From Botryllus schlosseri (taxonomy: Eukaryota): a stretch of 64,000 nucleotides of DNA. The translations under genes were made by a program, and so were the position numbers. Below the pieces are notes generated by a model, which was not told the DNA's origin, did not search any database, and saw only the letters and a program-made list of their open reading frames with translations. This document shows positions 1,615 to 63,217 of the stretch, in pieces; the first letter of the stretch is position 1; every line of letters begins with the position of its first letter. The stretch lies in assembly GCA_051294905.1 (NCBI GenBank), contig CM119373.1, positions 19,344,001 through 19,408,000 of the forward strand, given 5' to 3'.

Positions 1615-2535
1615 ATGGGGCATGTGCGTGTCAATACGGAAGAGCATGCGATTAACATGCTCTTGGAACTACGCAAAATGCAATGACATCCTGTCGATTC
1701 TGACTGTTTGATCAAAGTAGAAAATGATGTGTATCGCACTCACAGAAGTCTTATGTCTGCCGGATCGGCGCACATCCGAGACATGTTGGCAAGCAAAAGT
1801 CACACACTCTGGCAGCTTCCTTTTTAAAAACAGGTACAGTGTGTGAAGAGCTGTATTGATCTCATTTATTCGGGCGAATTGGAAATCCCTGACGGAAAGA
1901 TTGTGAACGTTCTGAAGATTGGAACTGGACGGTGTAAAACGGGTCATTGAATGTGGAAAACTACTTTGTGCTACAGGCTGAAAGAAGTCTCGGTGAAATG
2001 TAAATGTTTTTTCAAAGAAAATCTTATGGAGATAGCGAATCGGCCCGAATTCGGAAGAATGGCAATAGCGGAAATCGTTAATCTTTTGCTGACGGAAGAG
2101 GGAAAGTTTACCGAACACGACAAGCTGATTTTACTACTTGAGTGGGCTGAGAAAAAGCCACCAGAAACTTATGTGTTACCTTGTAAACGTCGAGGGTCAT
2201 GTGCTCAAAAGTGTAGCACGGCAAAAGTTGCAAGATGTAATGAAAACTGCCGGAATAAAGCTCTTACGGAAGCCCTGATGAATCTACTGGTAAATAAAAC
2301 ACCCGACGATATTGCAATCGATCACGAAGGATTTGCTTATGTGAAAGATATCCTGAAACGCCGAAGATTCCGAAGATTTTCTTTGTCAGAAAAAGAGGTC
2401 TCTGATTTGGTGATAAATAACATTGAGCGTCGCTTTGCAATCAAGGGCGAAGTCGGCAATTTTCAGATACAAGCGACCTGTGGTCATCCTCCCGATTCAG
2501 AAACTGGTAGCGTGGACGAGAATGGATCGAATTAG
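1615..2535 (+). pseudogene. Disrupted BTB-BACK gene joined by deletion directly to a Tpt1 N-lobe segment (no intron)
   Basis: ATG at 1615 (MGHVRVNTEEHAINML...) with TGA at 1684-1686 and internal deletions. ORF 1951-2535 reads BACK sequence (HDKLILLLEWAEKKPPE) straight into Tpt1-like sequence (ALTEALMNLL...RRFAIKG...IQATCGHP), junction near 2170. Confidence 0.8.
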
Positions 2536-3139
2536 GATTGCAGGGTCACAGAAAGTGTGCCCGGTAGGCCTGAGATGGCTGACGCATGATGCCTTGAGAT
2601 TAACAACTTTCAAAAATTCGTTTTTTCAAGGACCACCCTAGTATGCGTGCATCACTTTTACGATTGAAACCGGGAAATGAGCCTTTGTGTCATGGTGTAT
2701 AAACTTATTTTTAAAAATTAGCCCTATTTGTAGTGTCATTGGTCATTTTGCATCAGTCGCGATATTGACAGTGGCCAATGCCGATAAACTGCTAAAATTA
2801 TGCAGCCATTGAACAAATCTGCTTTTGAAACGACACCATTACCTTTCCGACCTATATTTTCTGCTTCTACCTAATGTACTTTCTGATATGTGTTTCAAAT
2901 TTCTTCTTTCACTTGTAGTTAAGTAGAAGTATACCGCTATACTTGTACTTGAGTAGCAACTGTGACCGCCAATGTAGATAGATAACCTAACCTACAGATA
3001 CTGCGCATGCACAGGCTATGCCTTTGTACAGAACCTTCACTTTTACCTCTGTTTGTTTTTAATTCCCACCTTTACCAGTTTGTTAATCTTTCCCGTTTCA
3101 GAATCCCTAGTGAATAAGGTGGTAGGTGTAATTTACACG

Positions 3140-3921
3140 ATGGTCCGAGTGCGTGTCAATGCGGAAGAGCATGCTGTTAAAATGCTATCGGAACTACACC
3201 GAATGCAACAAGATCGTGTTGATTGTGACTTAATGATCAAAGTTGAAAATGATGTGTATCACACTCACAGAAACGTAATGGCCTCGGGATCAGCCTACAT
3301 TCGAGACATGTTGGCAAGCAAAAGTCACCTTCCGTCGCTTTCCTTTGGAAATGCGGACTCAGAGTGCGTCAAGAACTGTATTGATTTTTTTTATACAGGC
3401 GAATTAGAAATCCCCGACGACAAGATTTCAATCATTCTGAAGATTGTAGCTAAGCTGCAGATGGACGGGGCAATGCAGATCATAGCCGGGATTTTGGCCG
3501 AATCGTTGAATGCGGAAAACTACTTTTGGACGAGAGCAAAGGCAGATCAGTACGGGTTGAAAGAAGTATCTGTGAAATGTCAAAGCTTCTTCGAAGAAAA
3601 TCTTATCGAGATCGTAAACCGTCCCCAATTCGGAAAGATGTCACTTGTGAAAGTTGTTCGTCTTATGACGGAAGGGGGGAAGTGTACCGAACATGATAAG
3701 CTGATCGTACTACTTAAGTGGGCTGAGAAGAATCCGCTAGTAACTGATGCTTTGCTTGACCAGATTCAACAGGTCCGGTTGGACTGCGTGCCACAGGTGC
3801 TTTTGAGATATCTTCTAAAATCCCACCCGATCGTTAGTAACAATTTAGCGATTTATAAGCTAATAAGTGATTACCTTCTTGAGCTTTCGGAAAAACTCAT
3901 TGAAGAAAATGAATCCTACAG
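3140..3921 (+). CDS. BTB-BACK (KLHL-like N-terminus) coding exon 1, clade A
   Basis: ATG at 3140 (MVRVRVNAEEHA). BTB motifs CDLMIKVENDVYHTHRNVMASGS and CIDFFYTGEL, followed by BACK helices. Ends at AG|GTGAGT donor, phase 2. Confidence 0.88.
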
Positions 3922-4380
3922 GTGAGTGTGCTACATCTTTTTTTAACTGTACCAATGTATATTGCCGTGAAAAAGAATGCCAAACAATCCTTTATACTTG
4001 TAAGTTCCTTGAATGTGCCGGTATATTCTGCCCGTTCCCTCATATCACTGTTTATTTCGGGGAGAATGCTCCTGTCCACTATGTCATATATTAATATACA
4101 TACACATACATGTATATAAATTTGTAGAAAAAATAGTTTTTCATCATGCCACACAATTCTGTTTCCGGTCACTTCTTGTCCTCAATTGTCAAACATACCA
4201 TACAAGATTATTTTAGAATGTCGGTTTCTGGTATAGTAATCTTTGAGCTCTTCTGTATTTTAATCACATAGGGATATCAGTCACCGCGAAAAATGGAACT
4301 CGACACTCGATTTTGCCCACTTGTGTAATTATGAGACGTAAAAATATCAACGAATTCATCATTGTTAATTCAATAAACAG

Positions 4381-4945
4381 GAGTGGCCAAGATCAAGGGA
4401 ACTCGTCTGACGTTGGGAATACATGCAACGACAACAACGCACAATTGCATGCAGTCGTTATAAAGAAAGAACAATTAGACACTTTTGCTTTACCTGCAAT
4501 ACTGAATATTCAAACGTTGCACCAACCGTTGCATGTCACTAAAAGTAATGTACTTTCCGAGAATAACAGATGCGTAAATGTCACGACACCTGTCAAGCGT
4601 CGATGCCCATATTCTCGAAAGTGTAGCAAGGTAAAAGTTGGAAGATTAAATGCAAACTGCCCGAATAAAGCTGTTACGGAAGCCCTTACAAATCTACTGG
4701 TAAATAAAACACCCGACGATATTGCAATCGATCACGAAGGATTTGCTCATGTGGATGATATCCTGAAACACCGAAGATTCCGAAGATTTTCTCTGTCAGA
4801 AAAAGATATCTATGATTTGGTGACAAATACCATTGAGAGTCGCTTTGCAATCAAGGGCGAAGTCGGTAATTTTCAGATACAAGCGATCTGTGGTCATCCT
4901 CCCTATTCAGAAACTGGTAGAGTGGAAGAGGATGGATCGAATTAG
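4381..4945 (+). CDS. Coding exon 2: linker plus truncated Tpt1/KptA N-terminal lobe; predicted 448-aa fusion with 3140-3921
   Basis: Acceptor AATAAACAG|G at 4380/4381, phase 2, in frame with ORF 4313-4945. Homologous to the N-lobe of the 16 kb Tpt1 domain (DHEGFAHVDDIL, SRFAIKG, IQAICGHP). No HGT or IHF motifs. Confidence 0.75.
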
Positions 4946-5860: not shown

Positions 5861-7051
5861 CTTGTGATCATCAAATTGAATCAATTCTAGTATGATAGTT
5901 GAAATTTGCTTGATAAATCGGTTGCAATACAAACCAAGGATTCGTTTCATATTTCGGATTGGCGGCTTCTAGCATGATTTACCTCGGAATCATATTTTGC
6001 CTTTGTGACTTCAAACTTGCAGGGGTTCATGTATTGAAAGATTGAATCTCTCAATTTGAAATTTTATGCCGATGATTGTGTCTCCTCGAAGCTTGCCATG
6101 GTCATACCATTTTTACTATACTTCTAATTTCTTACAGCTGCTTTCATGCTTGACTATTTCGTTCATTTCATTTAATTGAACACAACCTAGTCCTATATGG
6201 TAATGAAGTCCCGGATTTTTTTTTCTGGATTTTCATACCTATGCTACTCAATCTTTTTTTTGCTTATTTTTGATGAGTTGCCACAATTTGTAGCCTTTCT
6301 ACATCAACCCTACCCTGAATGGAGTCAGGGACTGGACGCGTGTTAAAGTGTTGAGTACTGTTACTGGCTACTGGCAATATACTATTGGATATCCTCTGCT
6401 CCCAAGTGCATTATTTAGGTTCTCTCATGAGTACATTTCTTATTACCCACCTTCAACTTGTCTTGATTCCTTATTTGGCCTTAACGACTAGATTTACCAG
6501 CTTTGGTAATGCTCAAGTTTTATCAAGGAAAACAAAGTTTTTCGATGTGCTTGCATCTCTTTCATGATTGAAACTGAAAGTGTCATGACATCTGATAACT
6601 AAATATATTTTTGAAAATTGGTCCTATTTGTAGTGTGATTGGTCATTCTACATCAGTCGTGACGATACAATCTGCATTTTGAAAGTGGCCACTGTCGATT
6701 ACCTGCTGAAATTATGCAGCCATTGAAAAAATCTACTTTTGAAACAACTCCAGTAGCCTGCTTTTTGTACCTTGATTCTCTACTTCTACTTGCAGTACAA
6801 ATGACATGTTGAAATTGCTACTTCCAATTGTAATTGAGTAGAAGTTTTCGGCCATACTGGTACTTGAGGAGCAACACTTACTGCTTTTGCCACTACTGTA
6901 GATAATGACCTACATATACTGCGCTGCCAATGCCTTTCTACAGAACCTTCACTTTTTCTTCGCTTTGTTTTGACTGCTTGACTTTATAAGGTTGCAAATC
7001 TTTCTCAATTCAGAATCCCTAGTAAACAAAGTATTAGGTGTAATTTATACA

Positions 7052-7820
7052 ATGGTGTGCGTGCGTGGCAATGCGGAAGAGCATGCGATTAACATGTTAT
7101 CGGAACTGTGCAGAATGCAATGAGATCGTTGATTGATCGATCAAAGTCAAAAATTATGTATATTGCAGTCATTGAAGAGTAATGTCGGCGAGATCGGTAT
7201 ACATCCGAGACATGTTGGCAAAGAAACTCCGCACACCCTGGCGGCTAGATTTCGGAAAACTGGACTCAGAGTGTGTGAAAAGCTGCATCGATTTCATTTA
7301 TTCGGGCGAATTGGAAATCGCTGACAGAAAGATTGAAAACGTTCTGAAGATTGGTACTATTCTGCAGGTGGACGGGGTAAAACTACTCATAGCCGGGATT
7401 TTGGCCGAATCGTTGAATGTAACAAAACTACTTCTCGACGAGAAAGATGGCTGATTAGTATGGGCTGAAAGAAGTCTTGGTGAAATGCAAAAGAAAATCT
7501 CATGGAGATCGCGAACCGGCCTGAATTTGGCAGGACGGCAATAGCGGAAATCATTAATATTTGGCTGACAGAAGGGGAAAATTTAGCGGACACGACAAGC
7601 TGGTTGTACTTCTCAAGTGCGCCGAGAAAAACTCACCGGAAACTTATTAGTTGTCTGAACAGATACAGCGAATCAGGTTGGACTCTGTGCCACCGGTGTT
7701 TTTGAGAAATCTCCTTAAATCCCACCCTTTTGTTAGCAACGATTTTGCGACTTATAAGCTAATAAGCGATCACCTTCTTGAGATTCCGGAAAAACTCATT
7801 GAAGAAAATGAATCTTACAG
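7052..7820 (+). pseudogene. BTB-BACK exon 1 pseudogene, clade A
   Basis: ATG at 7052, TGA at codon 24 (7121-7123), several frameshifts (fragments in ORFs 7182-7454 and 7502-7705). Ends at the homologous donor AG|GTGATA. Confidence 0.85.
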
Positions 7821-9154: not shown

Positions 9155-9732
9155 GAGTGGCGAAGAAACAACGTCACCGGATCAAGGGAACTCATCTGAC
9201 GTTGGGAATACATGCAATGACAACAACACACACTCACATGCAGTCGTCATAAAGGAAGAACAATTAGACACTTGCTTTACCTGCAAAACCCCATGTTCAA
9301 ACCTCGCACAATCAGCGACATGTCCCTAAAAGGAATGTACTTTCTGAGAATGACCCTCTCGTCACTGTTGTGATACCTTGTAAGCGTCTAAGGTCATATG
9401 CTCGAAAGTGTAGCACGGCAAAAGTTGCAAGATCTAATGAAAACTGCCCGAATATAGCTCTTACAGAAGCCCTTACGAATCTACTGGTTGATAAAAAACC
9501 CGACGATATTGCAATTGATCACGAAGGATTTGCTTATGTGGATGATATCCTGAAACACCGAAGATTACGAAGATTTTCTCTGTCAGAAAAAGACGTCTAT
9601 GATTTGGTGACAAATGGCATTGAGAGTCGCTTTGCAATCAAGGGCAAAGTCGGTAATTTTAAGATACAAGCGACCTGTAGTCATCCTGCCGATTCAGGAT
9701 CTGGTAGCGTGGACGAGGATCAATCGAATTAG
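9155..9732 (+). pseudogene. Tpt1 N-lobe exon 2 pseudogene
   Basis: Acceptor AATAAACAG|G at 9154/9155. A 2-nt deletion near 9272 (GACACTTGC versus GACACTTTTGC in the 4381 copy) shifts the frame; the distal part is ORF 9370-9732. Confidence 0.8.
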
Positions 9733-10901: not shown

Positions 10902-11683
10902 ATGGTGCGCGTGCGTGTCAACGCGGAAGAGCATGCTGTTCAAATGCTATCGGAACTACACAGAATGCAGCGAGATCGTGTTGGTTGTGACTTTCTGATC
11001 AAAGTCGAAAATGATGTGTATCACACTCACAGAAACGTGATGGCGTCGGGATCAGCGTTCATACGAGGCATGTTGGCAAAGAAAAGTCACTTTCCTTCGC
11101 TTTCTTTTAAAAATGGTGACTCTGAATGCATCAAGAACTGCATTGATTTTATTTATTCGGGCGAATTAGAAATCCCGGATGGTAAGATTTCAATCATTCT
11201 GGAGATCGTAGATAAGCTGCAGATGGAAGGGGTAAAGCAAATCATTGCCGGAATTTTGGCCAAATCGTTGACTGTGGAAAACTACTTCTTGACGAGTACT
11301 ATGGCAGACCATTACAGGTTGGAAGAAGTGACTGTGAAATGTCAAAGCTTTATCAAAGAAAATCTCATCGAGATCGCAAACCGTCCCCAGTTCCTAAGGA
11401 TGTCAATTGTGGAAGTCATTCGTCTTATGACGGAAGGGGGGAAATTTACCGAACACGACAAGCTGATCATACTACTCAAGTGGGCTGAGAAAAATCCGCT
11501 AGTTACATGTGCTTTGCTTAATCAGATTCAACAAATCCGGTTGGACTGCGTGCCTCCATTGTTTTTGAGAAATCTCCTTAAATCCCACCCGATTGTCAGT
11601 AAGAATTTAGCTATTTACAAGCTGATAAGCAATCACCTTCTCGAAACTCCAGAGAAAGTCACCGAAGCTATTGCATGCGGCAG
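10902..11683 (+). CDS. BTB-BACK coding exon 1, clade A
   Basis: Open frame from ATG 10902, close paralog of 3140 with the same 782-nt length to the donor AG|GTGAGT (phase 2). Confidence 0.88.
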
Positions 11684-12752: not shown

Positions 12753-13371
12753 GAGTGACAAAGAGATGAAGTCACTAGATCAAGGGAACTCATCTGACGT
12801 TGGGAATACATGCAATGAAAACAAGGCACAATCGCATGCAGTCGTCATAAAGGAAGAACAATTAAACAATTTTGCTTTACCTGTAATACCGAATATCCAA
12901 ACCTTGCACCATCGGTTGCATGTCCCTAAACGGGATGTGCTTTCCGAGAATAACAGACTCGTCACTGTTGCGATACCTTTTAAGCGTCAATGGTCATATG
13001 CTCAAAAGTGTAACACGCCAAAAGTTGCAAGATTAAATGAAAACTGCCCGAACAAAGCTCTTACGGAAGCCCTGACGAATCTACTGGTAAATAAAACGCC
13101 TGATGATATTGCGATCGATCACGAAGGATTTGCTTATGTGAAAGATATCCTGAAACACCGAAGATTCCAAAGATTTTCCTTGTCAGAAAAGGATGTCTAT
13201 GATTTGGTGAAGAATGACAAAGGTAGTTGCTTTGCAATCAAGGGCGAGTTCGGTAATTTTAAGATTCAAGCGACCTGTGGTCATCCTGATTCGCAAAGCG
13301 ATAACATGAACGAGGATGGATCGGATTCGAACTCAGAGTCACAGAAAGTGTGTCCGGTAGGCCTGAGATGA
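12753..13371 (+). CDS. Coding exon 2: linker plus truncated Tpt1 N-lobe; predicted 466-aa fusion with 10902-11683
   Basis: Acceptor AATAAACAG|G at 12752/12753, phase 2, in frame with ORF 12685-13371. Paralog of exon 4381-4945. Confidence 0.75.
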
Positions 13372-14408: not shown

Positions 14409-15205
14409 ATGATGGTGCGCGCTGCCTGTGTCAATGTCGAGGAACATGCTACAAAAATGCTGTCGGAGTTACGCATGATGAGACAACATCACGACCAATG
14501 TGATTTCGTGATCAAAGTCGAGAATGACGAGTACCACACTCACAAAAATGTAATGGCTGCGGGCTCAGAATATTTTCGAGCCATGTTAGCTCACGACACT
14601 AAAGAAAGCCAAGATGGTCAAATCACTTTTAAAGATGTGGATTCCGGCTGTGTGAAAAACTGTATCGATTTCATTTACTCCGGAGAATTTGAAATACCGG
14701 ACGGGAAGATTAAAGACCTGCTTCACATCGGAATCATGCTGCAGTTGGAGGGAGTAAAACAAGTCATATCTGGAATATTGGCCGAATCGATTAACGCAGA
14801 AAATTATCATTCGACGACAAGTATCGCTGATATGTATGAGCTGCATGACGTGTCATCGAAATGCCAACGTTTTTTCATAGAGAATCTTACGGAAATCGCG
14901 AACCAGCCAGAATTCGGAAATATGGCGATATCCGAACTCGTTGATATTTTAAAAACGGATGACTTGGAATATTCGGAAGAAGAGAAACTGACCATACTGT
15001 TGAAGTGGGCCGAGAATAATCCGAAAGAAAACGATGCCTTGCTCAACGCGATCAAACGACTCGATCTGGTGAAAATACCGTCTCCGTTTTTGAGAAATCT
15101 TCTCAAAACCAACCCGGTCATCAGCAACGACTTCATGATATACAAGCTGATAAGTGATCATCTGCTTGAGGAAAAAGCCGTTATGGTCACGCCTATTCAT
15201 GACAG
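14409..15205 (+). CDS. BTB-BACK coding exon 1, clade B
   Basis: CDFVIKVENDEYHTHKNVMAAGSEYFRAML and CIDFIYSGEF motifs, BACK region. Donor AG|GTATGT at 15205/15206, phase 2. Confidence 0.9.
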
Positions 15206-16114: not shown

Positions 16115-16931
16115 GCAAAACATGGCATCAAAATCGGAAGTGGTAGAGAAATCATTCGATGCAAACGGAACGCTATCACATGCCATAGTCAAATACGAGC
16201 AGCAAGCAATCGCCACCGGATTTGCACCAAACCAGGGTCGAAGCACGTCCAGTCGGTGTTACGAAAGGCCGCGAGATCTTGAGAGCCGCGACAGTGGATC
16301 GAATATCGCCTTCTCAAAAGCGCTAGTGACCCTGCTCAGACATAAGAAGCCACGCAGTATCCCGGTAGATGCAGCGGGTTACGCGTTTGTGAAGCAAATC
16401 TTGAGAAGTCCTCAATTTCGAAAGTTCAACTTGACAGAGCGTGGAGTTTACGATATCGCAATGGATGACGGTAAAAACCGCTTTGAAATTGAAGGCGCGG
16501 TTGGCGTTAACTTCAGAATACGTGCAACGCAAGGTCATTCGTTCAAAATCGAACCGGAAGCTTTTGGACTGCGTTTAATCGAGGACCCTCACGAATATCC
16601 TGTGGTTGTCCATGGGACATACCTACAACACCTACGCGCCATAAAAAGAGACGGATTGAAATGCATGAAAAGAGCTTACATTCATTTCGCCATTGGCCTT
16701 ATCGGCGAAACGTGCGTGACCAGTGGCATGCGGGACACCTGTGACATAGTCATCGTTATCGACATGCCAAAAGCCATGAGAGACGGCTTGAAGTTTTATT
16801 TGTCCCAGAACGAAGCCGTACTCAGTGATGGCGTGTGTGGTGTCGTTTCTCCAAAGTACTTCAAAGCTATCAAGAAGTATGACTCTAAAACGAATCGGTT
16901 CGAGGAAATTGACTTTGTGTTTCAAGCATAG
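16115..16931 (+). CDS. TRPT1-like: Coding exon 2: full-length tRNA 2'-phosphotransferase (Tpt1/TRPT1/KptA) domain; predicted 537-aa BTB-BACK-Tpt1 fusion
   Basis: Motifs SKALVTLLRH, KNRF, IRATQGHS, VVHGT, MKRAYIHFA, SGMR, SQNEAVLSDG, PKYF match the TRPT1 family in order. Acceptor GATTAACAG|G at 16114/16115, phase 2. An internal ATG at 16122 would also allow a stand-alone product. Confidence 0.9.
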
Positions 16932-18737: not shown

Positions 18738-19487
18738 ATGGTGCATTGTGCCGGTGTCAATGTCGGAGAACATGCCGCTAAAATCCTGTCGGAACTACAC
18801 AGGATGAGGCAACACCATGACCATTGTGATTTCGTGATCAAAGTCGAAAATGACGAGTATGGCACTCATAAAAATGTTCTGGCAGCTGGCTCCGAGTATT
18901 TTCGAGTCTTGTTGGCTCACGACACGAATGAGCGCCGAGATGAGCAAATCACTTTTGAAGATGCGGATGCTGAGTGTGTGAAAAAGTGCATCGATTTTAT
19001 TTACTCTGGTGAATTTTAAGTCCCTGATGGGAAGATTAGAGATCTGCTTGACATTGGAATTATGCTGCAGTTGGACGGAGTAAAGCAAATCATATCTTGA
19101 AGTTTGGTCACATCGATTAACGTAGAAAACTATCATTCGACCACAAATATCGCAGACATGTAGGCTTACGAGCTAGTGGATGTGTCATTGAAACGCCAAT
19201 GTTTTTTCAAAGACAATCTCATGGAAATCGCAAACCAACCCGAAATCACAAACCCTGACGTATGGCGTTATCTAAACTCATGGATATTTTGAATATGGAC
19301 AGAGAAAAATCCGATAGGAAACAACGTTTTGCTGGACTCTATCAAACAAATCAGCCTGGAACGTGTGTCGTCTACGTTTTTGAGAAACCTTCTCGAAACC
19401 CATCCGGTTATCATGAACGACTCCACGGTATACAAGCTATCATCTCTTTGAGGAAAAAGTTGTCCAATTCGCGGCTAATCATGACAG
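18738..19487 (+). pseudogene. BTB-BACK exon 1 pseudogene, clade B
   Basis: In-frame stops TAA 19017-19019 and TGA 19098-19100, further indels. Retains donor AG|GTATGT. Confidence 0.85.
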
Positions 19488-20151: not shown

Positions 20152-20972
20152 GCGAAATAAGGCATCAAAATCTGAAGCCGAAAAGAAATCACATGTTGCA
20201 ACCAGTATGCTATCACATGCCGTAGTCCAAAGCAAGCAACAAGCAGCCACCGCCTGTTTTTCAGCTAACCAGGGACGAAGCACGTCCGGTCAAAGTTACA
20301 GAAGGCCGCAAGATCTCAACTGCCGCTATAAAGGATCAACTATAATATACCGGTAGCACAGCGGGTTACGTGTTCGTGGAGCAAATCTTCAGAAGCCCCT
20401 GATTTCTAAGTACAACTTGACACGATCCTAAAAACCGCTTTGAGATTAAATGCGCAATCTTTGAAAATTTTCAACTTCGTGTGACCGAGTCTCATTCATT
20501 CATAATCGAGCCAGAAGCTTTAGGACTGCGTTTGATCGAGAACCATCATGAATTTCCATTAGGTGTTCACCTGCCCTACCATAAACGCCTGCCGGCCATA
20601 AAGCGAGATGCGTTGAAATGCATGAACAAAGCAATTTACATTTATTTCAAAATTGGCTTCATGGGAGAAACCCTCAATACCGGCGGCATAAGCAATAACC
20701 ATGGCGTAGTCATCGTACCGGATATGCCGAAAGCTATGAGAGATGGTTTGAAATTCTATGTGTTGCCAAACGAAGCAGTACTCAGCGATGGCGTATGTGG
20801 TGTCATTTCACGCAAATTCTTCAATGCTATCAAGAAATACCATTATAAAACTAATCGGTTTGAGGAAATTGACTTTGCCGTTTCTGCATTTTGTAACCAA
20901 GCACTGAAATTTTTACTGATATTGATATTGATGATGCATAGTGGAGTACTTCCCATATGTATGATTACTTGA
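20152..20972 (+). pseudogene. Tpt1 exon 2 pseudogene with internal deletions
   Basis: Acceptor at 20151/20152. Relative to the 30462 copy it has deletions near 20345 (removing the R-H helix) and near 20428. The C-lobe remnant is ORF 20481-20972. Confidence 0.85.
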
Positions 20973-40199: not shown

Positions 40200-41073
40200 G
40201 CGAAACAAGACATCAAAATCTGGAGTCGAAAATAAATCACATGGTACAAGCAGTATGCTATCACATGCCGTAGTCAAAAGCAAACAACAAGCAGCCACCG
40301 CCCGTTTCTCAGCTAACCAGGGACGGAGCACGTCCGGTCAAAGTTACAGAAGGCCGCAAGATGTCAACTGCCGCTATAAAGGATCGACTATTGCTTTCTT
40401 GAGAGCACTAATGAACCTACCCCGGCATAAAAAAAAACGATTAATATCCCGGTAGACGCAGCGGGTTACGCGTTTGTGGAGCAAATCTTAAGAAGCCCTC
40501 CATTTCTAAAGTACAACTTGACAAAGAGAGTCATTTACGATTTCGCGATGCACGACCCTAAAAACCGCTTTGAGATTAAAGGCGCAATTAGGGAACATTT
40601 TCAACTTCGTGTGACCGAGTCTCATTCAGTCATTCATAATCGAGCCAGCAGCTTTAGGATTGCGTTTGATCAAGAACCCGCATGAATTTCCATTGGTTGT
40701 CCACCTGCCCTACGATAAACACCTTCTGACCATGAAGCGAGATGGGTTGAAATGCATGTACAGTGCAACTTACATTTGTTTAAAAATTGGCTTCATGGGC
40801 GAAACCCGCATGACCGGCGACATGAGAGATAACCATGACATAGTCATCATACTGAATATGCTGAAAGCTATGAGAGATGATTTGAAGTTCTATGTGTCGC
40901 CAAACGAAGCAGTACTCTCTGATGGCGCATCTGGTGTTATTTCTCCCAAATACTTCAAAGCAATAAAGAGATACAATTATAAAAAGAATCGTTCTGAGGA
41001 AATTGACTTTGCCGTTTCTGCATTTTGTAACCAAGTACTGAAATGTTTTTTGGTATTCATGATGCATGGTTGA
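40200..41073 (+). pseudogene. Tpt1 exon 2 pseudogene
   Basis: Phase-2 acceptor at 40199/40200. Split over ORFs 40177-40455, 40476-40685 and 40660-41073 by an A-run expansion near 40430 and an indel near 40625. Confidence 0.85.
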
Positions 41074-44837: not shown

Positions 44838-45667
44838 ATGGCACAGGCTGTGCGTGTCAATGTATCCGAGCATGCGACAAAAATACTGTCGGAATTGCAA
44901 CGGATGCGCCAAGGCTGTAATCATTGTGATTTTGTAATAAAAGTTGAAAATGATGTTTACCGCACCCACAAAAATGTTTTGTCCGCGGGCTCGGAGTATT
45001 TCCGAGCCGTGCTTGAGCATGACACTAAAGAGAGTCGGGACGGGGTGATCACTTTTAAAGACGTGGATTCCGAATGTGTGAAGAACTGTGTAGACTTCAT
45101 TTATTCTGGGGAATTTGAAATCCCGAACGGAAAGATGAAGGACCTTCTACATGTAGGAATCATGTTGCAATTGGACGGACTAAAAACAGCCACAGCTGAA
45201 ATATTGGCAGAATCGATAAATGTGGGAAATTACTATTGGACGACAAATATCGCAGATATGTATGCATTGGTCGATGTCTTGACAAAATGCCAACGTTTTT
45301 TCGAAGAAAACCTAATGGAAATCGCAAACCAGCCCGAATTTGGAAATATGCCACTATCCAAACTTGACGACTTTCTGCTGGCTGACATTTGCAAATATTC
45401 AGAAGAAGAAAAACTGACCATATTACTCCGGTGGGGTGAGAAAAACGCCAAAGCGAACAGCAATTTGCTCGAATCACTTCGGCGTTTCAAGTTGGAAACA
45501 GTCTCGTCCACGTTTTTGATTAATCTTCTCAAAGCCGACCCAGTTGTGAGCACCGACATGACGATATACAAGTTCTTCAATGTTCACCTTATCGAGAGTT
45601 TGGAAAAAAAGGTCAAAATTAATGAAGGATCGATCAGTCAAGAATTGAAACCGATCGGTATGAATAG
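44838..45667 (+). CDS. BTB-BACK coding exon 1, clade C
   Basis: Open frame, 830 nt to the donor AG|GTAAGC (phase 2). Confidence 0.9.
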
Positions 45668-45705
45668 GTAAGCACAAAAAAATCTTTTAAATGGATACCA
45701 TAGGA

Positions 45706-47754: not shown

Positions 47755-49246
47755 GAGCGATACTGGAAGGAATGTGAAAGTTGAGGATAAGCGTTCCATT
47801 TTCAGGGAACCGGGAAACGAGTCTGGAAGCAACTCACAACACCGACTCGGATTCGCTTCAGTTTCATTTCAAAAGCAGGGAAACATTGCATGGTATCAAA
47901 TACAAGATGGTAGGAAGAGCATAAGCGGTGAAGATTCCAAAGCTCCAAGTTCATCTGGTGTACTTGGTAATGACACGGCACGTAATTCTAGCTTCTTATT
48001 GTCCCTGGGTCAAAGCTCATCTGGTTTACCTAGTAAAGGCAAAGCAAGTGGTGGCTTTGTCTTCTCAAGCTCATTTGGTGCACCAGGTAAAGACAATTCT
48101 AGTGATTCCAACCCCTTTTCGTACCCACGTCAAAGCTCATCTGATGTACCTAGTAAGGACAAAGCAAGTGGTGGCTTTGTCTTCTCAAACTCATTTGGTG
48201 CACCAAGTAAAGACAATTCAAGCGATTCCAACCCCTTTTCGTACCTCCCTCAAAGCTCATCTGGTGTACCTAGTACAGGTGAAGCAAGTAGTGCCGGTCC
48301 TGTCTTCCCAAGCTCATTTCGTGTGCCTGGTAAAGACGCGGCAAGGGATTCCAGCTCCTTTTTGTCCAAAAGTAAAAGCTCAACTGGTGTACCTAGTAAT
48401 GGTAAACCAAGTGGTGTCGGCCTTGTCTTCTCTAGCTCATTTGGTGCGCCTGGTAAAGTTGCATCAAGTGATTCCAGCTCCTTTTCGTCCAAAAGTAAAA
48501 GCTCATCTGCTGTACCTAGTAAAGGCAAAGAAAGTGGTGTCGGTCCTGTCTTCCCAAGCTCAATTTGTGGATGTAAAGTTGCAGCAAGGGATTCTAGCTC
48601 CTTTTTGTCCCAAAGTAAAAGCTCATCTGGTGTACCTAGTAATGGTAAACCAAGAAGTGTCGGCCCTGTCTTTTCTAGCTCATTTGGTGCGCCTGGTAAA
48701 CACACATCAAGTGATTCCAGCTCCTTTTCGTCCAAAAGTAAAAGCTCATCTTGTGTACCTAGTAAAGGCAAAGCAAGTGGTGCCGGCCCTGTCTCTCCGA
48801 GCTTATTTGGTGGGCCTGGTAAAGACACAGGTCCCTTTTTGTCCAAAAGTAAAAGCTCATCCGGTGTACCTAATAAAGGCAAAGCAAGTGGTGTCGGCTT
48901 TGACTTCTCGAGATCATTTGGTGCGCTTGGTAAAGACCCAGCAAGTTATTCCAGCTCCTTTTCGTCCAAAACTAAAAGCTCATCCGGTGTACTTAGTAAA
49001 GGCAAAGCAAGTGGTCGCTTTGTCTTCCATAGCTCATTTGGTGCGCCTGGTACAGACACAGCAAGCGATTCCAGCTTCTCTGGTGTACCTAGTAAAGGCA
49101 AATCAAGTGACGTCGGCCCTGTCTTCCCGAGCTCATTTTGTACGTCTGGTAAAGACACAGTAAGTGATTCCAGTTTTTCATTGTCCCAAAGCTCATCTGC
49201 TGCACATGGTAGAGACAAAGCAAGCGATTCCAGCTTCATACCCTAA
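47755..49246 (+). CDS. Coding exon 2: Ser/Gly/Lys-rich tandem-repeat tail; predicted 773-aa product with 44838-45667
   Basis: Acceptor AAAATATAG|G at 47754/47755, phase 2, in frame with ORF 47774-49246. The 5' end is homologous to exons 25035 and 56491. AATAAA at 49476. Confidence 0.75.
48010..49200 (+). repeat. Coding minisatellite, about 10 units of 33-41 codons (about 120 bp)
   Basis: Unit consensus SSGVPSKGKASGVGPVFSSSFGAPGKDxxSDSSSFxSKSK; all unit-length changes preserve the frame. Confidence 0.9.
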
Positions 49247-55076: not shown

Positions 55077-55906
55077 ATGGCACAGGCTGTGCGTGTCAAG
55101 GTGGCCGAGCATGCGACAAAAATATTGTCCGAATTGAGCCGAATGCGGCAAGGATGCGATCATTGTGATTTCATAATAAAAGTTTAAAATGATGTGTATC
55201 GCACCCACAAAAATATGCTGTCAGCTGGCTCGGGATATTTTCGAGCCATGTTCGAACACAACACTAAAGAGAGGCAGGACGGGGAGATCACTTTTAAAGA
55301 TGTGGATTCCGAATGTGTGAAAAACTGTCTCGATTTCATTTATTCTGGTGAATTTGAAATCCCGGCCGGAAAGATTAAGGATCTCCTACACATCGGAATC
55401 ATGTTGCAATTGGACGGAGTAAAAACAGCTGTTGCTGGTATTTTGATGGAATCGATAAATGCGGAAAATTACTATTGGATGACAAATATCGCAGATATGT
55501 ACGAACTGGTAGATGTCATAACAGAATGCCAACGTTTTTATGAAGAGAACCTCATGGAAATCGCAAACCAGCCAGAATTTCAAAATACGCCGTTATCAAA
55601 ACTTGACGATTTTCTGCAGGATGACGATTGCAAATATTCAGAGGAAGAAAAACTAACCATATTACTCCGATGGGGAGAGAAAAACCCCAAAGCTAGCAGC
55701 GATTTACTCGAATCAATTCAGAGATTTAAGTTAGAAACAGTCTCGTCTGCGTTTTTGATTGATCTTGTCAAAGTCAATCCAGTTGTGAGCAATGACTGGA
55801 TGATATACAAATTCTTCAATAATCGCATTGTCGAGACATTGGAAAAAATGATCAAAACTAACGAAGGAGCGGTCAGTCACGAATCTACACCTATCGCTAT
55901 GAATAG
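55077..55906 (+). pseudogene. BTB-BACK exon 1, clade C, with a single nonsense codon
   Basis: ATG 55077; TAA at codon 37 (55185-55187) where the 44838 paralog has GAA; otherwise open for 830 nt to the donor AG|GTAGGT. Confidence 0.8.
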
Positions 55907-56490: not shown

Positions 56491-56836
56491 GACGGATACT
56501 GGAAGGAATGTAAATGATGGCGATATGCCTTCTGTTTCCGGGGGCCAAGGTAAAGACTCTGTGAGCAACAAACAACAGGGGCCCGAAATCGCTTCAGTTG
56601 CATCCCAAATACATAGAAACATTGCACGTGATCAAGTGCAAAATGCTGAGAAGAGTGTAACCGGTGCACATTCCAAAGCGCAAAGTTCATCAGGTGTACA
56701 TGGTAAAGGCCCATCACTCGGTTACATGGCCAGACGTCGCAGAAGTCGATTTTTACTTTCTGCACCTTTACAAAGTCCAAGTTCATCTGGTGTGCCTGAT
56801 AATGAAATGGTCAGTTTGTTCACAGCCGGACGTTGA
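56491..56836 (+). pseudogene. Exon 2 of the 55077 gene: short Ser/Gly-rich tail
   Basis: Acceptor GAAATATAG|G at 56490/56491, phase 2, in frame with ORF 56447-56836. Homologous to exon 47755 but without the repeat expansion. Confidence 0.6.
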
Positions 56837-58870: not shown

Positions 58871-58883
58871 CGCATATGGACAT

Positions 58884-60506: not shown

Positions 60507-61336
60507 ATGATGGAGGACGCTGTACGTGTCAATGTGAAAGGATATGCGAATAAGATGCTGTCAGAATTGCAACGTATGCGGGAAGAGCGCATTCAGTGTG
60601 ATTTCATAATTAAAGTCGAAGATGATGTGTATCACGCTCATAAAAGCGTATTGTCGGCGAGCACCAAGTTTTTTGAAGATATATTCGCGCACAACATTAA
60701 TCATATAAGTGAAGATGGAAAAATCATTTTTCACGATGTCGATTCCGAGTGCATGGAGAAATGCTTAAACTTTATATATACGGGTGATTTAGAAATCCCT
60801 AACCGAAAGATTAAGGACCTTCTTCACATCGGTGACAAGTTGGAATTGGATGAACTGTTAGACGCCGTGTCTGTAATTCTGGATAACAGGATGGATGCGG
60901 AAAACTATTATTGGACTAGAGATATTGCAGTAACGTACGGGCTTGGAAAACTCATATGGCATTGTCAGGTCTTTTTCGAAAACCACATTATGGATATTGC
61001 CGACCAGCCAGAATTCGGAAATACCACAATATCCGAACTCTGCGATATTTTAGCTGGGAACGTCTGGTTTGCTAACAGTGAGGACGAAATTACAGTACTA
61101 CTCAACTGGGCTGATAGCAACCCGCTTGAGAAAGAGTTTGTGCTTGAAAGAATGGAGCAGTATTTGGAGTGCGAATTTTCGACTTCGTTTTTGAGAGATC
61201 TTCTCCAATCTAATCCACTTGTCACCAACGACTTTGAGTTATACAGGCTCGTCAGCGATCGTCTGATTGAAACTTTGGAACATATAAACCAAACCACCAA
61301 AAATCGTCACCAGGGAGTTGAACCTTGTTTTCATAG
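60507..61336 (+). CDS. Divergent BTB-BACK coding exon 1, clade D
   Basis: CDFIIKVEDDVYHAHKSVLSASTKFF and CLNFIYTGDL motifs; 830 nt to the donor AG|GTATGT (phase 2). Confidence 0.88.
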
Positions 61337-62771
61337 GTATGTACACAATATTTTTTAGAACCAAGACCTTCAACAGCAGCGCTATTCTTGTTTAAACCCT
61401 TAATAATGGCCATTTCGAAAGCATAGGCACTGCCTGACTGGAATCGTTGGCCGTTTTGCCTGATCAGGTGAGCAACGATGGTTTTCCAAGATAAAGTAAT
61501 TTAATAAAAAATAAAATAAAATATGGTGTGAGCACAGGACACTGATTCCATACAGGGGAACTGCTAGGACCGTTTAGGATTCAAGTTGTAATGAATGAAG
61601 AAGTTCTGCGAGTGTAAACCCCCATTACAAGGAATCAGTATCGAAACAATGTAATTGACACGTAGTAGCGTGTTTTACACTGAGTTGACTGATAAGTAGC
61701 CTAAGCTCTTGAATGCAAGTCCCGAGGTTATTGTCGATTATTTTATTGCCTCAACATTCCATTATCGGCCTCTTATAAGATATCGGATTTTTAAAACAAA
61801 GCAGCTATTCAATTGGCTTGCCACAGATATTTGTGGCCAGATACTTTCAAGACCTAGTCCTAGAGTTACAAGTGAAGCCGTTATAGCAGTTCTTCGCATC
61901 CTGAGTCTACGCACCCGTTGGCGGTGCCAGAATAAGTTGCGGGGTTGCATGAATTCACTGTCAAATTATATGATACGTCACAATGTTTGATTGATGTCAT
62001 GTGCCAAACTATTTCAGTTTAATAATATTGTTGCTGAAAATTAGCTATTCTATGTCCGACATCAATATTCCTCACTGGCTGACACGGCTTCGGTGATAGC
62101 ATTCCATGGAGGAAGAAGTAGCTGATATGAATGGGCATTGTGTATATCGGCTTGATTTACAATGGCCCAGACACTGCCAAGACGGAGACGATCTTTACGA
62201 AGAGATAGTTTTCCGGCAAGTGCCATGTCTAACTAACCCCAAGTTTTGTCAGGTATTCTGCGCAGCTCATAGTTCAAATAGAATGAAAGTGACGATCATG
62301 ATATTTTTCTTTTATTTGTATTTCTTTTACAATTTTTTTTTTGTGGTAACTATGCCCGTCGCCCGTGTCAGTGAGCACAACGTTGTACTGGTGTAGAGTT
62401 TTGAAATCATGGTTGTTACACTGTGTGGCCTATTTTATCTCAATATTAAATCCATGAGGCCCGCGGACTCTACGAAATTTGAATGGTGGCCCGCGACCCC
62501 TGACTTATGGTAACACTAACTAAATCAAAGATCTAATATTGAGGATTTTGACAGAATCAATTTTTTTCATGCTTTGCGTTATGAACTTTTGCACAACTAT
62601 TCTTCAGTTCGATGTGCTGACTACAATATGGTGGCCCTGAGCTGACATTTTGCGGGGAACTGTCACGACCCTGATTGTAACCGTCAATCGCCATATTTCG
62701 CGTACGCTAGTATGGGAAATCTATGCGTGGGCCTATTTTTAGAAATTATTGCAGTCGGTCTTCTGAGATAT

Positions 62772-63165
62772 GTCTGGGGCGATAAAAATGTTCTAACCAA
62801 TTGTTCCATAGACATTAAATATTCTAATCCATATTTATTCAACAGGCCTCAACTCCAAATCGAGTCAGCAGTAAAACAAAGACATGTCGCGACACCACAA
62901 CCCACGCACCCACGAGATGTGCCAACAAACAGAAGGGCGCCTGAAAATCCTCAATCAGTGAGGTCAGTGTCTGGGGCGATAAAAATGTTCTGAACAATTG
63001 TTCCGTAGATATTAAATATTCTAATTAATATTCATTCAACAGGCCTCAACTCCAAGTCGAGTCAGCAGTAAAACAAGAACATGCCGCGACACCACAACCC
63101 ACGCACCCACGAGATGTGCCAACAAACAGAAAGGCGCCTGAAAATACTCAACCAGTGAGGTCACT
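62772..63165. repeat. Direct tandem duplication, period 197 bp
   Basis: GTCTGGGGCGATAAAAATGTTCT...CAGTGAGGTCA occurs twice head to tail with high identity. Confidence 0.92.
62846..62962 (+). CDS. Candidate exon 2 of the 60507 gene (39 codons, Pro/Gln/Thr-rich)
   Basis: Acceptor ATTTATTCAACAG|G at 62845/62846, phase 2, in frame with ORF 62712-62993; possible donor AG|GTCAGT at 62962/62963. Confidence 0.5.
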
Positions 63166-63217
63166 TCGTGCACGTACTCGACGCGTGCCATACAGCAAAA
63201 TGGCCAAAGGCTCATGA
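63043..63217 (+). CDS. Candidate terminal exon of the 60507 gene (duplicate of 62846-62962 plus a basic tail)
   Basis: Acceptor TTCATTCAACAG|G at 63042/63043, phase 2; open to TGA 63215-63217, ending RSLRARTRRVPYSKMAKGS. Confidence 0.45.

What the first reader, a model, noticed from the sequence alone, without database searches (positions are those of the whole stretch)
1615..63217. Array of BTB-BACK exons with exchangeable phase-2 tails
Seen: all 7 intact BTB-BACK exons end at a phase-2 donor at the equivalent position (3921, 11683, 15205, 24687, 33519, 45667, 61336), and the disrupted copies that reach that position retain it. Each is followed by a phase-2 acceptor opening one of at least five tail types (full Tpt1, Tpt1 N-lobe, Pro/RG, Ser-rich repeat, short duplicated exon). 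No Kelch repeats are seen. Inference: a conserved dimerisation/CUL3 module is being paired with rapidly changing effector tails. All junctions are frame-compatible and on one strand, so exon-skipping splices between units could give extra combinations, and BTB heterodimers could combine tails. Birth-and-death turnover (7 intact, 6 disrupted) is typical of conflict or immune gene families, but that role is unproven.
Basis: partly seen in the sequence, partly recalled or inferred. Interest (0 to 1): 0.8.

Follow-up and report, generated by a model that had tools for sequence, protein, structure and literature searches.

The report
Tandem BTB-BACK genes with Tpt1-derived tails
A sea-squirt-like genome carries a tandem array of two-exon genes in which the front half of a Kelch-type ubiquitin-ligase adaptor is spliced (shown by transcripts for two copies) to an RNA 2'-phosphotransferase (Tpt1) or to decayed remnants of it; this domain combination was not found elsewhere, but the idea of freely exchangeable tails is not supported.

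Summary
The window has 13 BTB-BACK exons, 7 intact and 6 disrupted. All intact ones end at the same phase-2 AG|GT donor. Each is followed by a conserved phase-2 acceptor opening one of five tail types. There are no Kelch remnants.

Transcript contigs from two studies show exactly the predicted joins 11683|12753 (u4) and 15205|16115 (u5), with no coverage of the unique intron sequence. No cross-unit join was seen.

The array is larger than the window: at least 21 units over about 170 kb. It derives from a genome-wide expansion of intronless BTB-BACK-Kelch genes (144 copies scored of 461 candidates). The tail derives from an intronless Tpt1 paralogue (T0) at the array's 5' edge. The acceptor lies 6 nt upstream of the ancestral Tpt1 start codon.

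Tail type follows exon-1 clade, so units duplicated whole and the shared phase is inherited.

Pairwise dN/dS:
- exon 1: 0.11-0.29
- full Tpt1 tail: 0.18, catalytic tetrad intact
- RNA-lobe-only tails: 0.3-0.4, tetrad lost
- Pro/RG and short tails: about 1

The Pro/RG and Ser-rich tails have no homologues elsewhere in the genome.

Verdict: a real BTB-BACK-Tpt1 fusion family evolving by birth, death and tail decay, not a combinatorial cassette system. Function is untested. Other first-reader notes on this window (s1-278685, s1-278773) touch the same units.

The parts
1591..2535 (+). u1, disrupted unit. A BTB-BACK copy with stops, joined to a Tpt1 RNA-lobe tail by an internal deletion. This leaves a single ORF at 1951-2535. 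Donor and intron are lost.
3140..3921 (+). u2 exon 1, intact BTB-BACK of 260 codons. Phase-2 donor AG|GTGAGT at 3921.
4381..4945 (+). u2 tail exon: disordered linker plus Tpt1 RNA lobe only. Catalytic Arg-His and Arg are lost.
6992..7820 (+). u3 exon 1, disrupted by frameshifts and stops. Donor AG|GTGATA is kept at 7820.
9155..9732 (+). u3 tail, RNA-lobe type, frameshifted.
10902..11683 (+). u4 exon 1, intact BTB-BACK. Use of the donor at 11683 is shown in transcripts.
12753..13371 (+). u4 tail exon, 205 codons. Residues 1-97 are predicted disordered. Residues about 99-175 fold as the Tpt1 RNA lobe. The join 11683|12753 appears in contigs of two studies. One contig runs on to 14327, which reads as the 3' UTR.
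14409..15205 (+). u5 exon 1, intact BTB-BACK of 265 codons. Use of the donor at 15205 is shown in transcripts.
16115..16931 (+). u5 tail exon: a full two-lobe Tpt1/KptA with the Arg-His-Arg-Arg tetrad intact. The ancestral start codon lies at 16121, 6 nt after the acceptor. The join 15205|16115 appears in contigs of two studies.
18738..19487 (+). u6 exon 1, disrupted by stops. Donor kept at 19487.
20152..20972 (+). u6 tail, full-Tpt1 type, broken.
23858..24687 (+). u7 exon 1, intact. Donor AG|GTAAGT at 24687.
25035..25452 (+). u7 tail, Pro-rich with an RG repeat, 138 codons. The splice is predicted only.
29032..29796 (+). u8 exon 1, disrupted by a frameshift and a stop. Donor kept at 29796.
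30462..31372 (+). u8 tail, full-Tpt1 type, frameshifted.
32690..33519 (+). u9 exon 1, intact, 93% identical in protein to u7.
37299..37683 (+). u9 tail, Pro/RG type, 127 codons. Its C-terminus differs from u7's after the RG repeat. dN/dS against u7 is 1.14.
38699..39307 (+). u10 exon 1, truncated at the 5' end and frameshifted. Donor kept at 39307.
40200..41073 (+). u10 tail, full-Tpt1 type, broken. It lies directly upstream of the mL43 gene, as the free Tpt1 gene does in relatives.
44838..45667 (+). u11 exon 1, intact. Donor AG|GTAAGC at 45667.
47755..49246 (+). u11 tail, 496 codons, Ser/Gly/Lys-rich. It is built from a 123-nt unit repeated 9.4 times. Other frames are open too. It has no homologue elsewhere in the genome. 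Run X1 holds 12% of its words.
55077..55906 (+). u12 exon 1, with one in-frame stop. Donor AG|GTAGGT kept at 55906.
56491..56836 (+). u12 tail. It shares only about the first 215 nt with the u11 tail and has no repeat array.
60507..61336 (+). u13 exon 1, intact and the most divergent copy. Donor AG|GTATGT at 61336.
62846..63217 (+). u13 candidate tails: two tandem copies of a short exon (62846-62993 and 63043-63217). dN/dS between them is 1.19. The splice is predicted only.

Best explanation
The window holds 13 of at least 21 tandem units of a lineage-specific two-exon gene family in a tunicate-like genome.

Origin of the parts (inferred from sequence comparison):
- Exon 1 is the BTB-BACK half of this genome's hugely amplified family of intronless BTB-BACK-Kelch genes.
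- Exon 2 descends from an intronless Tpt1/KptA paralogue, here called T0. T0 still stands alone at the array's 5' edge. In relatives a T0-like gene lies next to the mL43 gene.
- A phase-2 intron runs from the former BACK/Kelch boundary to an acceptor 6 nt upstream of the ancestral Tpt1 start codon. The two genes therefore became one reading frame with Tpt1 in the place of the Kelch propeller.

Shown directly: this splice is used in transcripts of units u4 and u5.

Later history (inferred): the fused unit was amplified by whole-unit tandem duplication. That is why every copy shares donor position and phase. The tails then decayed in steps:
- u5 keeps a full, catalytically equipped Tpt1 tail.
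- One clade keeps only the RNA-binding lobe. It has lost the catalytic residues and also the conserved Thr-Lys-Glu loop of the BTB domain.
- Another clade replaced the tail with orphan low-complexity sequence (Pro/RG, Ser-rich repeat).
- u13 has a short orphan exon.
- Half of the copies are pseudogenes.

How it most likely works (inferred, not shown): the BTB-BACK part dimerises and docks to CUL3, as in KLHL and KBTBD adaptors. In u5 it presents a Tpt1 domain as the working end. That domain either recognises nucleic-acid phosphate ends or carries out NAD-dependent ADP-ribosyl transfer. RNA-lobe-only copies would be catalytically dead binders. Low-complexity-tailed copies would act in effect as BTB-BACK-only proteins, or are on the way to loss.
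For: Anatomy:
- 13 copies, phase-2 donors and conserved acceptors.

Splicing:
- Contigs of runs X1 and X2, from different studies, carry the joins 11683|12753 and 15205|16115 with GT..AG ends.
- Depth is zero in the unique intron sequence; only a repeated hairpin element in the u4 intron is covered.
- One 1789-nt contig covers the end of u4 exon 1, the join, the whole tail and the 3' UTR.

Parent family:
- 144 matches scored of 461 candidates in the own genome. Most are intronless ORFs of about 545 aa, and the three fetched carry BTB, BACK and Kelch.
- The array is one clade against three such outgroups, support 100/100.

Tail origin:
- T0 is 321 aa with an intact tetrad and no BTB within 19 kb upstream.
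- In relatives' contigs a T0-like gene is followed by mL43, as u10's tail is in the window.
- The start Met of T0, P0002, P0003 and P0005 aligns with the ATG 6 nt after u5's acceptor.

Tail class follows exon-1 clade.

Selection:
- exon 1 dN/dS 0.11-0.29
- u5 tail against T0 0.18
- RNA lobe 0.3-0.4
- linkers 0.7-1.15
- Pro/RG tail 1.14

Catalysis and fold:
- The catalytic residues equivalent to human Arg40, His41, Arg86 and Arg150 (PMC10415124) are kept in u5 and lost in RNA-lobe tails.
- The folded part of the u4 tail matches only Tpt1/KptA structures in the top 21 PDB hits.

BTB-BACK:
- u5 exon 1 aligns without gaps to KBTBD2 (E = 1.8e-23), and KLHL3 is the next distinct match (E = 1.8e-22).
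- The u5-u9 BTB pair scored ipSAE 0.83 against a best control of 0.35. This mark was reached by 51 of 78 solved complexes and 2 of 108 mismatched pairs. Runs agree in at least 86% of contacts and partner pLDDT is at least 81.
Against: - Only two of seven predicted splices were tested.
- The runs that show the joins are labelled RNA only by guess.
- Two raw-read RNA runs, sampled at 6% and 13%, showed no expression.
- CUL3 binding, dimerisation and Tpt1 activity are inferred from family knowledge. The complex pass may come from the model's memory of solved BTB dimers.
- The hydrophobic position of the CUL3-contact loop is Thr in this family and in its Kelch parents.
- Only one intact catalytic fusion (u5) exists, so the enzyme-bearing form may be a recent accident rather than the family's purpose.
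- The array was rooted with only three outgroups.
- The RNA lobe of unit c against u2 has dS 0.06 while exon 1 has dS 0.62. Some gene conversion between tails has therefore occurred, so tails are not perfectly locked to their exon 1.
Confidence: 0.7

Rival explanations
1. Two genes, not one. Each unit would be an operon-like pair. The first gene is BTB-BACK-only and stops just past the donor. The second is a separate tail gene, translated from its own ATG after spliced-leader trans-splicing at the same acceptor. The cis-spliced joins would then be minor read-through chimeras, as reported for the two fuhc genes of Botryllus.
For: - u5 keeps the ancestral ATG 6 nt after the acceptor.
- Every exon-1 ORF stops within 1 to 7 codons after the donor.
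- P0002, a relative's 80%-identical copy of the u5 tail, was called from that ATG with 546 nt of non-ORF sequence upstream.
- A relative's T0-like transcripts differ just upstream of an acceptor: L021 against L020 and L022.
- Read-through chimeras between neighbouring genes are documented in a botryllid (PMC3691228).
Against: - The u4 join sits in one unbranched 1789-nt contig at the same depth as its exons.
- No contig runs from an exon into the unique intron sequence.
- The u2 tail has no ATG near its acceptor.
- Phase-2 compatibility and the donor are kept in 12 of 13 copies, including old ones.
- No loose ends were listed at 12753 or 16115, though 32 loose ends were not shown.
Confidence: 0.12
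2. Read-through transcription and exon skipping would join any exon 1 to tails of downstream units, and BTB heterodimers would mix tails, giving a diversified repertoire.
For: - All units lie on one strand with compatible phase-2 junctions.
- The u4 transcript contig reaches to within about 80 nt of the u5 start codon.
- A cross-clade BTB heterodimer is favoured by the model: ipSAE 0.83 against a best control of 0.35, a mark reached by 51 of 78 solved complexes and 2 of 108 mismatched pairs.
Against: - No 11683-to-16115 join appeared in four runs. Contigs can drop rare forms.
- The shared phase is explained by common descent.
- The Pro/RG and short tails tested look neutral, and the Pro/RG and Ser-rich tails are orphans.
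- Half the units are broken.
Confidence: 0.06
3. A mostly dead array. Apart from T0, and perhaps u5, the units would be decaying duplicates whose open frames and splices persist only because they are young. The family would have no function of its own.
For: - 6 of 13 copies are broken.
- dN/dS is about 1 in Pro/RG and short tails and in the linkers.
- Contig depth is low, and there are no reads in two raw RNA runs.
- The Ser-rich ORF lies in a tandem repeat that is open in other frames too.
Against: - Exon 1 has dN/dS of 0.11-0.29 with bootstrap limits below 1, even between copies with dS of 0.4-2.0.
- The RNA lobe has dN/dS of 0.3-0.4.
- Splicing of the RNA-lobe unit u4 is seen in two studies.
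Confidence: 0.1

Closest known systems
KLHL / KBTBD (BTB-BACK-Kelch) substrate adaptors of CUL3 ubiquitin ligases
   Same: Exon 1 has the BTB and BACK domains in the same order and of the same length. It aligns without gaps to KBTBD2 (E = 1.8e-23), and KLHL3 is the next distinct match (E = 1.8e-22). Its nearest relatives in the genome are intronless BTB-BACK-Kelch genes at 50-55% identity.
   Different: There is no Kelch propeller, and no remnant of one in 204 kb. The C-terminal part is supplied by a second exon of unrelated origin. The hydrophobic residue of the CUL3-contact loop is Thr, and the whole loop motif is deleted in the RNA-lobe clade.
Tpt1 / KptA / TRPT1 RNA 2'-phosphotransferase, which also ADP-ribosylates nucleic-acid 5'-phosphates
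   Same: The u5 tail matches the full Pfam model (E = 2.9e-45) and the human and mouse TRPT1 structures. All four catalytic residues are kept.
   Different: It is fused behind a BTB-BACK module. It descends from a fast-evolving intronless paralogue (T0), not from the multi-exon copy on contig C14. Most array copies keep only the RNA lobe without catalytic residues, or only the NAD lobe (unit b, outside the window).
BTB-BACK proteins with non-Kelch C-termini, such as the BTBD1/2/3/6 group with a PHR domain (from my own knowledge)
   Same: The same principle applies: the BTB-BACK scaffold is kept and the substrate-binding end is swapped.
   Different: A Tpt1 end was not found in 20 multi-domain Tpt1 proteins among the 150 best library representatives. 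It was also not found in a full-text search for papers naming BTB with KptA and Tpt1.
Read-through and operon-type gene joining in tunicates (Botryllus fuhc-sec / fuhc-tm, PMC3691228)
   Same: Two neighbouring genes on one strand are joined by splicing across the intergenic region. The acceptor lies just upstream of the downstream gene's start codon.
   Different: Here the join is in frame, is conserved across an amplified family, and for u4 is the only form assembled.

Membership tests
BTB-BACK-Kelch (KLHL/KBTBD) family | N-terminal BTB/POZ domain | tested here: met
   PF00651 matches with E from 4e-15 to 7e-26 in the intact exons scanned.
BTB-BACK-Kelch (KLHL/KBTBD) family | BACK domain directly after the BTB domain | tested here: met
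   PF07707 matches with E from 1.6e-6 to 5.6e-13, all above the curated cut-off.
BTB-BACK-Kelch (KLHL/KBTBD) family | C-terminal Kelch beta-propeller | tested here: not met
   tblastn with three Kelch regions from paralogues gave no hit better than E = 1.4 in 204 kb. Transcripts splice to non-Kelch exons.
BTB-BACK-Kelch (KLHL/KBTBD) family | CUL3-contact loop motif (hydrophobic-x-Glu) in the BTB domain | tested here: inconclusive
   The motif reads Thr-Lys-Glu in the T, P and S clades and in the Kelch-bearing parents. It is deleted in the RNA-lobe clade and altered in u13.
BTB-BACK-Kelch (KLHL/KBTBD) family | Binding to CUL3 | not testable with these tools
BTB-BACK-Kelch (KLHL/KBTBD) family | BTB-mediated dimerisation | tested here: inconclusive
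   The model favours a u5-u9 BTB dimer. ipSAE was 0.83 against a best control of 0.35. This mark was reached by 51 of 78 solved complexes and 2 of 108 mismatched pairs. The pass may come from memory of solved BTB dimers.
Tpt1/KptA/TRPT1 | Two-lobe PF01885 domain (RNA lobe plus NAD lobe) | tested here: met
   The u5 tail covers model positions 3-177 of 177 (E = 2.9e-45). RNA-lobe tails cover only positions 21-82, so they do not meet this feature.
Tpt1/KptA/TRPT1 | Catalytic Arg-His-Arg-Arg tetrad (human Arg40, His41, Arg86, Arg150; PMC10415124) | tested here: met
   The tetrad is kept in u5 and in T0. In the RNA-lobe tails Arg-His is replaced by Val-Asn and the third Arg by Gln, so those tails do not meet this feature.
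Tpt1/KptA/TRPT1 | NAD-dependent 2'-phosphotransferase or ADP-ribosyltransferase activity | not testable with these tools
   This needs an enzyme assay.

The most novel reading that the evidence does not exclude
The intact fusion (u5) would be a CUL3-linked enzyme or sensor. It would couple recognition or ADP-ribosylation of nucleic-acid phosphate ends (cleaved tRNA, viral or damaged RNA) to ubiquitin ligation. It would form one specialised arm of a very large, fast-evolving Kelch-adaptor repertoire used in conflict with viruses. A KptA domain has been reported in a nidovirus of a botryllid tunicate (PMC9503650). The fusion itself would have arisen when the acceptor just upstream of a downstream gene's start codon, possibly a trans-splice acceptor, was captured by a new upstream donor.
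Probability: 0.12. Interest if true: 0.8.

Novelty: new variant of a known kind. Interest (0 to 1): 0.5.

Why it matters
BTB-BACK adaptors and Tpt1 enzymes are both well known, but I found no other case of the two joined. Here the join is shown in transcripts and one copy keeps all catalytic residues. If the protein works as its parts suggest, it links a cullin ligase scaffold to an NAD-dependent nucleic-acid-end enzyme. That pairing can be tested directly in vitro. The locus also gives a clean, datable example of how a new two-domain gene arises: an intronless adaptor loses its propeller and captures the neighbouring gene through an acceptor just upstream of that gene's start codon. The copies along the array then show the new tail decaying step by step. 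On the negative side, the shared splice phase across the array is explained by descent and does not point to a combinatorial system.

Tried and rejected
- Word-index protein search with u7 exon 1: only one weak hit, Branchiostoma belcheri BTB-Kelch at 26%. This genome's family seems absent or withheld there.
- Search with a full Kelch paralogue: only three unnamed transcript-derived relatives at 40-53% identity, the rest at about 22%.
- Context of P0002, the 80%-identical relative of the u5 tail: no DNA was available. Whether the relative has the fusion is unknown.
- Viral links: no close viral relative of the tail. A profile found only phage or giant-virus KptA at 23-33% identity, so there is no sign of host-virus exchange.
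- Protein atlas: generic BTB-BACK clusters only for u5 exon 1, and no usable hit for the fused u1 ORF.
- Rfam on the window: nothing.
- Tail swapping by recombination: whole-unit blastn shows no sharp mosaic, and the tail tree agrees with the exon-1 tree as far as it is resolved. The only departure is a low dS in the RNA lobe of unit c against u2, read as local gene conversion.
- Pro/RG and Ser-rich tails as captured exons of other genes: rejected. There are no homologues elsewhere, apart from RG low-complexity matches.
- Homology of those tails to the Tpt1 tail: none beyond about 73 nt around the acceptor.
- Literature: no paper names BTB together with KptA and Tpt1, none names Botryllus with BTB and Kelch, and no relevant paper on tunicate Kelch-like expansions turned up.
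- Raw-read RNA runs X18 and X19 covered only a repeated hairpin element in the u4 intron.

Full report
**1. What is in the window**

The window is G000:C3:19344001-19408000 of a 495-Mb genome. Its intronless mL43 gene (41919-42563) has Styela clava as its best named match, at 67% identity. I therefore take the organism to be a tunicate, probably a stolidobranch ascidian. This is an inference.

tblastn with the window's own ORFs finds 13 BTB-BACK copies, all on the + strand. Pfam confirms BTB plus BACK in the intact exons.

- Seven copies are intact: u2, u4, u5, u7, u9, u11 and u13.
- Six are disrupted by stops, frameshifts, truncation or deletion: u1, u3, u6, u8, u10 and u12.

**2. The junctions**

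That is phase 2.

Five disrupted copies keep the donor, at 7820, 19487, 29796, 39307 and 55906. u1 lost it through an internal deletion that fuses BACK to the tail in one ORF.

AGGTRWGT occurs 11 times on the + strand of the window, and 9 of those are unit ends.

Downstream of every donor lies a phase-2-compatible acceptor. In P, S, Q and most N units it follows an AATCCA(T/C) motif. The full-Tpt1 units (u5, u6, u8, u10) lack that exact motif but align at the same place. The intron's 3' end is homologous across all tail types.

**3. The tails**

| Units | Tail |
|---|---|
| u5, and broken u6, u8, u10 | Full Tpt1/KptA (PF01885, E = 2.9e-45 for u5) |
| u2, u4, and broken u1, u3 | Disordered linker plus the Tpt1 RNA lobe only |
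| u7, u9 | Pro-rich with an RG repeat |
| u11, and broken u12 | u11: Ser-rich, a 123-nt unit repeated 9.4 times. u12 shares only the first ~215 nt and has no repeat array |
| u13 | Short exon present twice |

For the u4 tail, an AlphaFold model gives low confidence for residues 1-97. Residues about 99-175 form a confident helix-and-strand domain. The 21 best PDB matches of that model are all Tpt1/KptA/TRPT1 structures, aligned over about 75-85 columns at 2-4 A.

No Kelch remnant exists in 204 kb around the window (best E = 1.4).

**4. Transcript evidence**

I laid four runs on 11500-17400.

- Contigs of X1 and X2, from different studies, carry two joins with GT..AG ends. They are reported as 11680 to 12750 (cut +3) and 15201 to 16111 (cut +4). 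That is 11683|12753 and 15205|16115, exactly the predicted u4 and u5 splices.
- Depth is zero in both runs across 12288-12681 and 15243-16030, which is intron sequence.
- One 1789-nt contig of X2 covers the end of u4 exon 1, the join, the whole tail and a further 950 nt up to 14327.
- The runs are labelled RNA only by guess. Spliced joins with uncovered introns are what RNA gives.
- No join from 11683 to 16115 was seen.
- Two raw-read RNA runs, read to 6% and 13%, covered only a repeated hairpin element in the u4 intron.

For the Ser-rich tail the only hint of transcription is that X1 holds 12% of its words. The splices of u2, u7, u9, u11 and u13 remain predictions.

**5. Where the parts come from**

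*Exon 1.* The own genome gives 144 scored matches (461 candidates) to u5 exon 1. Most are on contig C1, inside single open frames of about 545 aa. Three that I fetched are intronless BTB-BACK-Kelch genes. In a DNA tree the array copies form one clade against these three, with support 100/100.

The Kelch-less copies on C3 run from about 19.313 to 19.480 Mb, beyond the window on both sides. There are at least 21 units.

*The tail.* At the 5' edge of the array stands T0, a free, intronless, 321-aa Tpt1 paralogue. No BTB lies within the 19 kb fetched upstream of it. T0 is 66% identical to the u5 tail over the Tpt1 domain.

In transcript-derived contigs of relatives, T0-like genes (P0003, P0005) start with their own ATG and are followed on the same strand by mL43. 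In the window, mL43 follows the broken Tpt1 tail of u10. The pair of a free Tpt1 paralogue and mL43 therefore looks ancestral, and the array grew between the two.

The start Met of T0, P0002, P0003 and P0005 aligns with the ATG at 16121, 6 nt after u5's acceptor. So the acceptor lies in what was the 5' untranslated region of the Tpt1 gene.

In a relative, contig L021 differs from L020 and L022 exactly upstream of an acceptor 35 nt before the ATG. This fits splicing there, perhaps to a spliced leader. Seven bases are too few to say.

**6. How the array evolved**

Exon-1 clades match tail classes:

- (u5,(u10,(u6,u8))): full Tpt1.
- The clade of u1-u4 plus outside units c, d and m1: RNA lobe only.
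- ((u7,u9),u11) with (u12,e1): orphan tails.

The RNA-lobe tail tree agrees with the exon-1 tree as far as it is resolved. Whole-unit comparisons show no sharp mosaic. Units were therefore copied whole, and the common donor position and phase are inherited.

Tpt1-derived tails occur in four separate lineages: the T clade, the N clade, unit a with a divergent RNA lobe, and unit b with an NAD lobe only. A full Tpt1 tail is therefore the likely ancestral state.

The Pro/RG and Ser-rich tails share only about 73 nt around the acceptor with each other, and nothing with Tpt1 tails. They have no homologue elsewhere in the genome apart from RG low-complexity matches.

One departure from strict co-inheritance: unit c against u2 has dS of 0.06 in the RNA lobe but 0.62 in exon 1. 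I read this as local gene conversion.

**7. Selection**

Pairwise Nei-Gojobori estimates with codon bootstraps:

| Region | dN/dS |
|---|---|
| Exon 1 | 0.11-0.29; limits of the three bootstrapped pairs all below 0.6 |
| u5 tail against T0 | 0.18 (0.10-0.28) |
| RNA lobe | 0.28-0.41 in four of five pairs; upper limit below 1 in two of them |
| Linker of RNA-lobe tails | 0.69-1.15 |
| Pro/RG tail, u7 against u9 | 1.14 (0.68-2.21); C-termini differ after the RG repeat |
| The two short u13 exons | 1.19 |

So the BTB-BACK module and the Tpt1-derived parts are constrained. The Pro/RG and short tails cannot be told from neutral. The Ser-rich tail has no intact partner and was not tested.

**8. Function**

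The u5 tail aligns with human and mouse TRPT1 structures. It keeps the residues equivalent to human Arg40, His41, Arg86 and Arg150, which PMC10415124 names as catalytic. RNA-lobe tails have Val-Asn and Gln at the first three positions and lack the NAD lobe.

u5 exon 1 aligns without gaps to KBTBD2, and KLHL3 is the next distinct match. The loop motif reads Thr-Lys-Glu, as in the Kelch-bearing parents. The RNA-lobe clade has deleted it.

A predicted complex of the BTB domains of u5 and u9 scored ipSAE 0.83, against a best control of 0.35. This mark was reached by 51 of 78 solved complexes and 2 of 108 mismatched pairs. Runs agree in at least 86% of contacts, and partner pLDDT is at least 81. 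Because many BTB dimers are solved, this shows likeness, not proof.

From family knowledge I infer a dimeric scaffold that may dock to CUL3 and carries Tpt1 where Kelch used to be. Nothing here measures that.

**9. Comparison and novelty**

The nearest known kinds are KLHL/KBTBD adaptors and Tpt1/TRPT1.

- Membership in BTB-BACK-Kelch fails on the Kelch feature.
- Membership of u5's tail in Tpt1 is met on domain and tetrad.
- I found no BTB among 20 multi-domain Tpt1 proteins from the 150 best library representatives.
- No paper names BTB together with KptA and Tpt1.
- Read-through joining of neighbouring genes is documented in a botryllid tunicate (PMC3691228). This is both a precedent for the origin and the basis of the main rival.

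I class the finding as a new variant of a known kind. It is a real, transcript-supported fusion family.

**10. Limits**

- Only one 5.9-kb stretch could be laid on reads.
- Only three outgroups were used.
- dN/dS values are pairwise estimates.
- The species name is not given.
- Proteins of this genome and its near relatives seem to be left out of the protein searches. Absence of the fusion elsewhere is therefore weakly shown.

Noticed in passing
window 41919-42563 (+) and 52319-52920 (+): An intronless mitochondrial ribosomal protein mL43 gene of 214 aa (PF05047; 67% identical to Styela clava). About 10 kb downstream lies a degenerate second copy. The duplication that made u11 and u12 therefore carried mL43 along.
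   Followed up: partly
window 11880-12100 (u4 intron): A hairpin element with inverted arms of about 60 nt, which looks like a MITE. It has very high depth in RNA runs (contig depth up to 585; raw reads fit only in part), so it is a repeated, transcribed family.
   Followed up: partly
G000 contig C1, about 6.5-7.6 Mb, 13.8-15.7 Mb and 35.9-36.2 Mb; also C14, C5, C4, C16, C17: A very large expansion of intronless BTB-BACK-Kelch genes of about 545 aa (144 scored of 461 candidates). They are 50-55% identical to the array's exon 1. Named public proteins are only about 22% identical to them.
   Followed up: partly
L040 and L041 (G000:C6:25784001-25788000 and 25822001-25826000): BTB-BACK copies whose open frame ends after 325-355 aa without Kelch. 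In L040 a downstream ORF by eye resembles an eIF4G-type MIF4G region. Kelch replacement may have happened more than once in this genome.
   Followed up: no
window, 35-45 nt upstream of each exon-1 ATG (for example 14375-14385 for u5): A conserved pyrimidine-rich CAG acceptor-like site lies just upstream of every exon-1 start codon. It may be a spliced-leader or 5'-UTR-intron acceptor.
   Followed up: no
L025 1166-2131 (G000:C3:19313166-19314131), 30 kb upstream of the window: T0, a free intronless Tpt1 paralogue with an intact catalytic tetrad and a Lys-rich N-terminal stretch. The u5 tail and P0002 have lost that stretch.
   Followed up: partly
G000:C3, about 19331300-19331970 (unit b, upstream of the window): A unit whose tail keeps only the NAD lobe of Tpt1, behind a region that by eye looks coiled-coil. 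This is the mirror image of the RNA-lobe-only tails.
   Followed up: no
window 4664-4897 against unit c (L009 about 3450-3680): The RNA-lobe coding region is far more alike at synonymous sites (dS 0.06) than the exon 1 of the same two units (dS 0.62). This suggests gene conversion between tails.
   Followed up: partly
L021 against L020 and L022 (a relative's T0-like transcripts): The contigs differ exactly upstream of an acceptor 35 nt before the ATG. L021 has TATTAAG there, while the others have intron-like sequence. This may be a spliced-leader junction.
   Followed up: no
window 16938 and 17127-17158: Contigs of X1 and X2 leave the reference here, with 114-255 nt of sequence not found in the window. 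It is probably a structural difference between haplotypes in the u5 3' flank.
   Followed up: no
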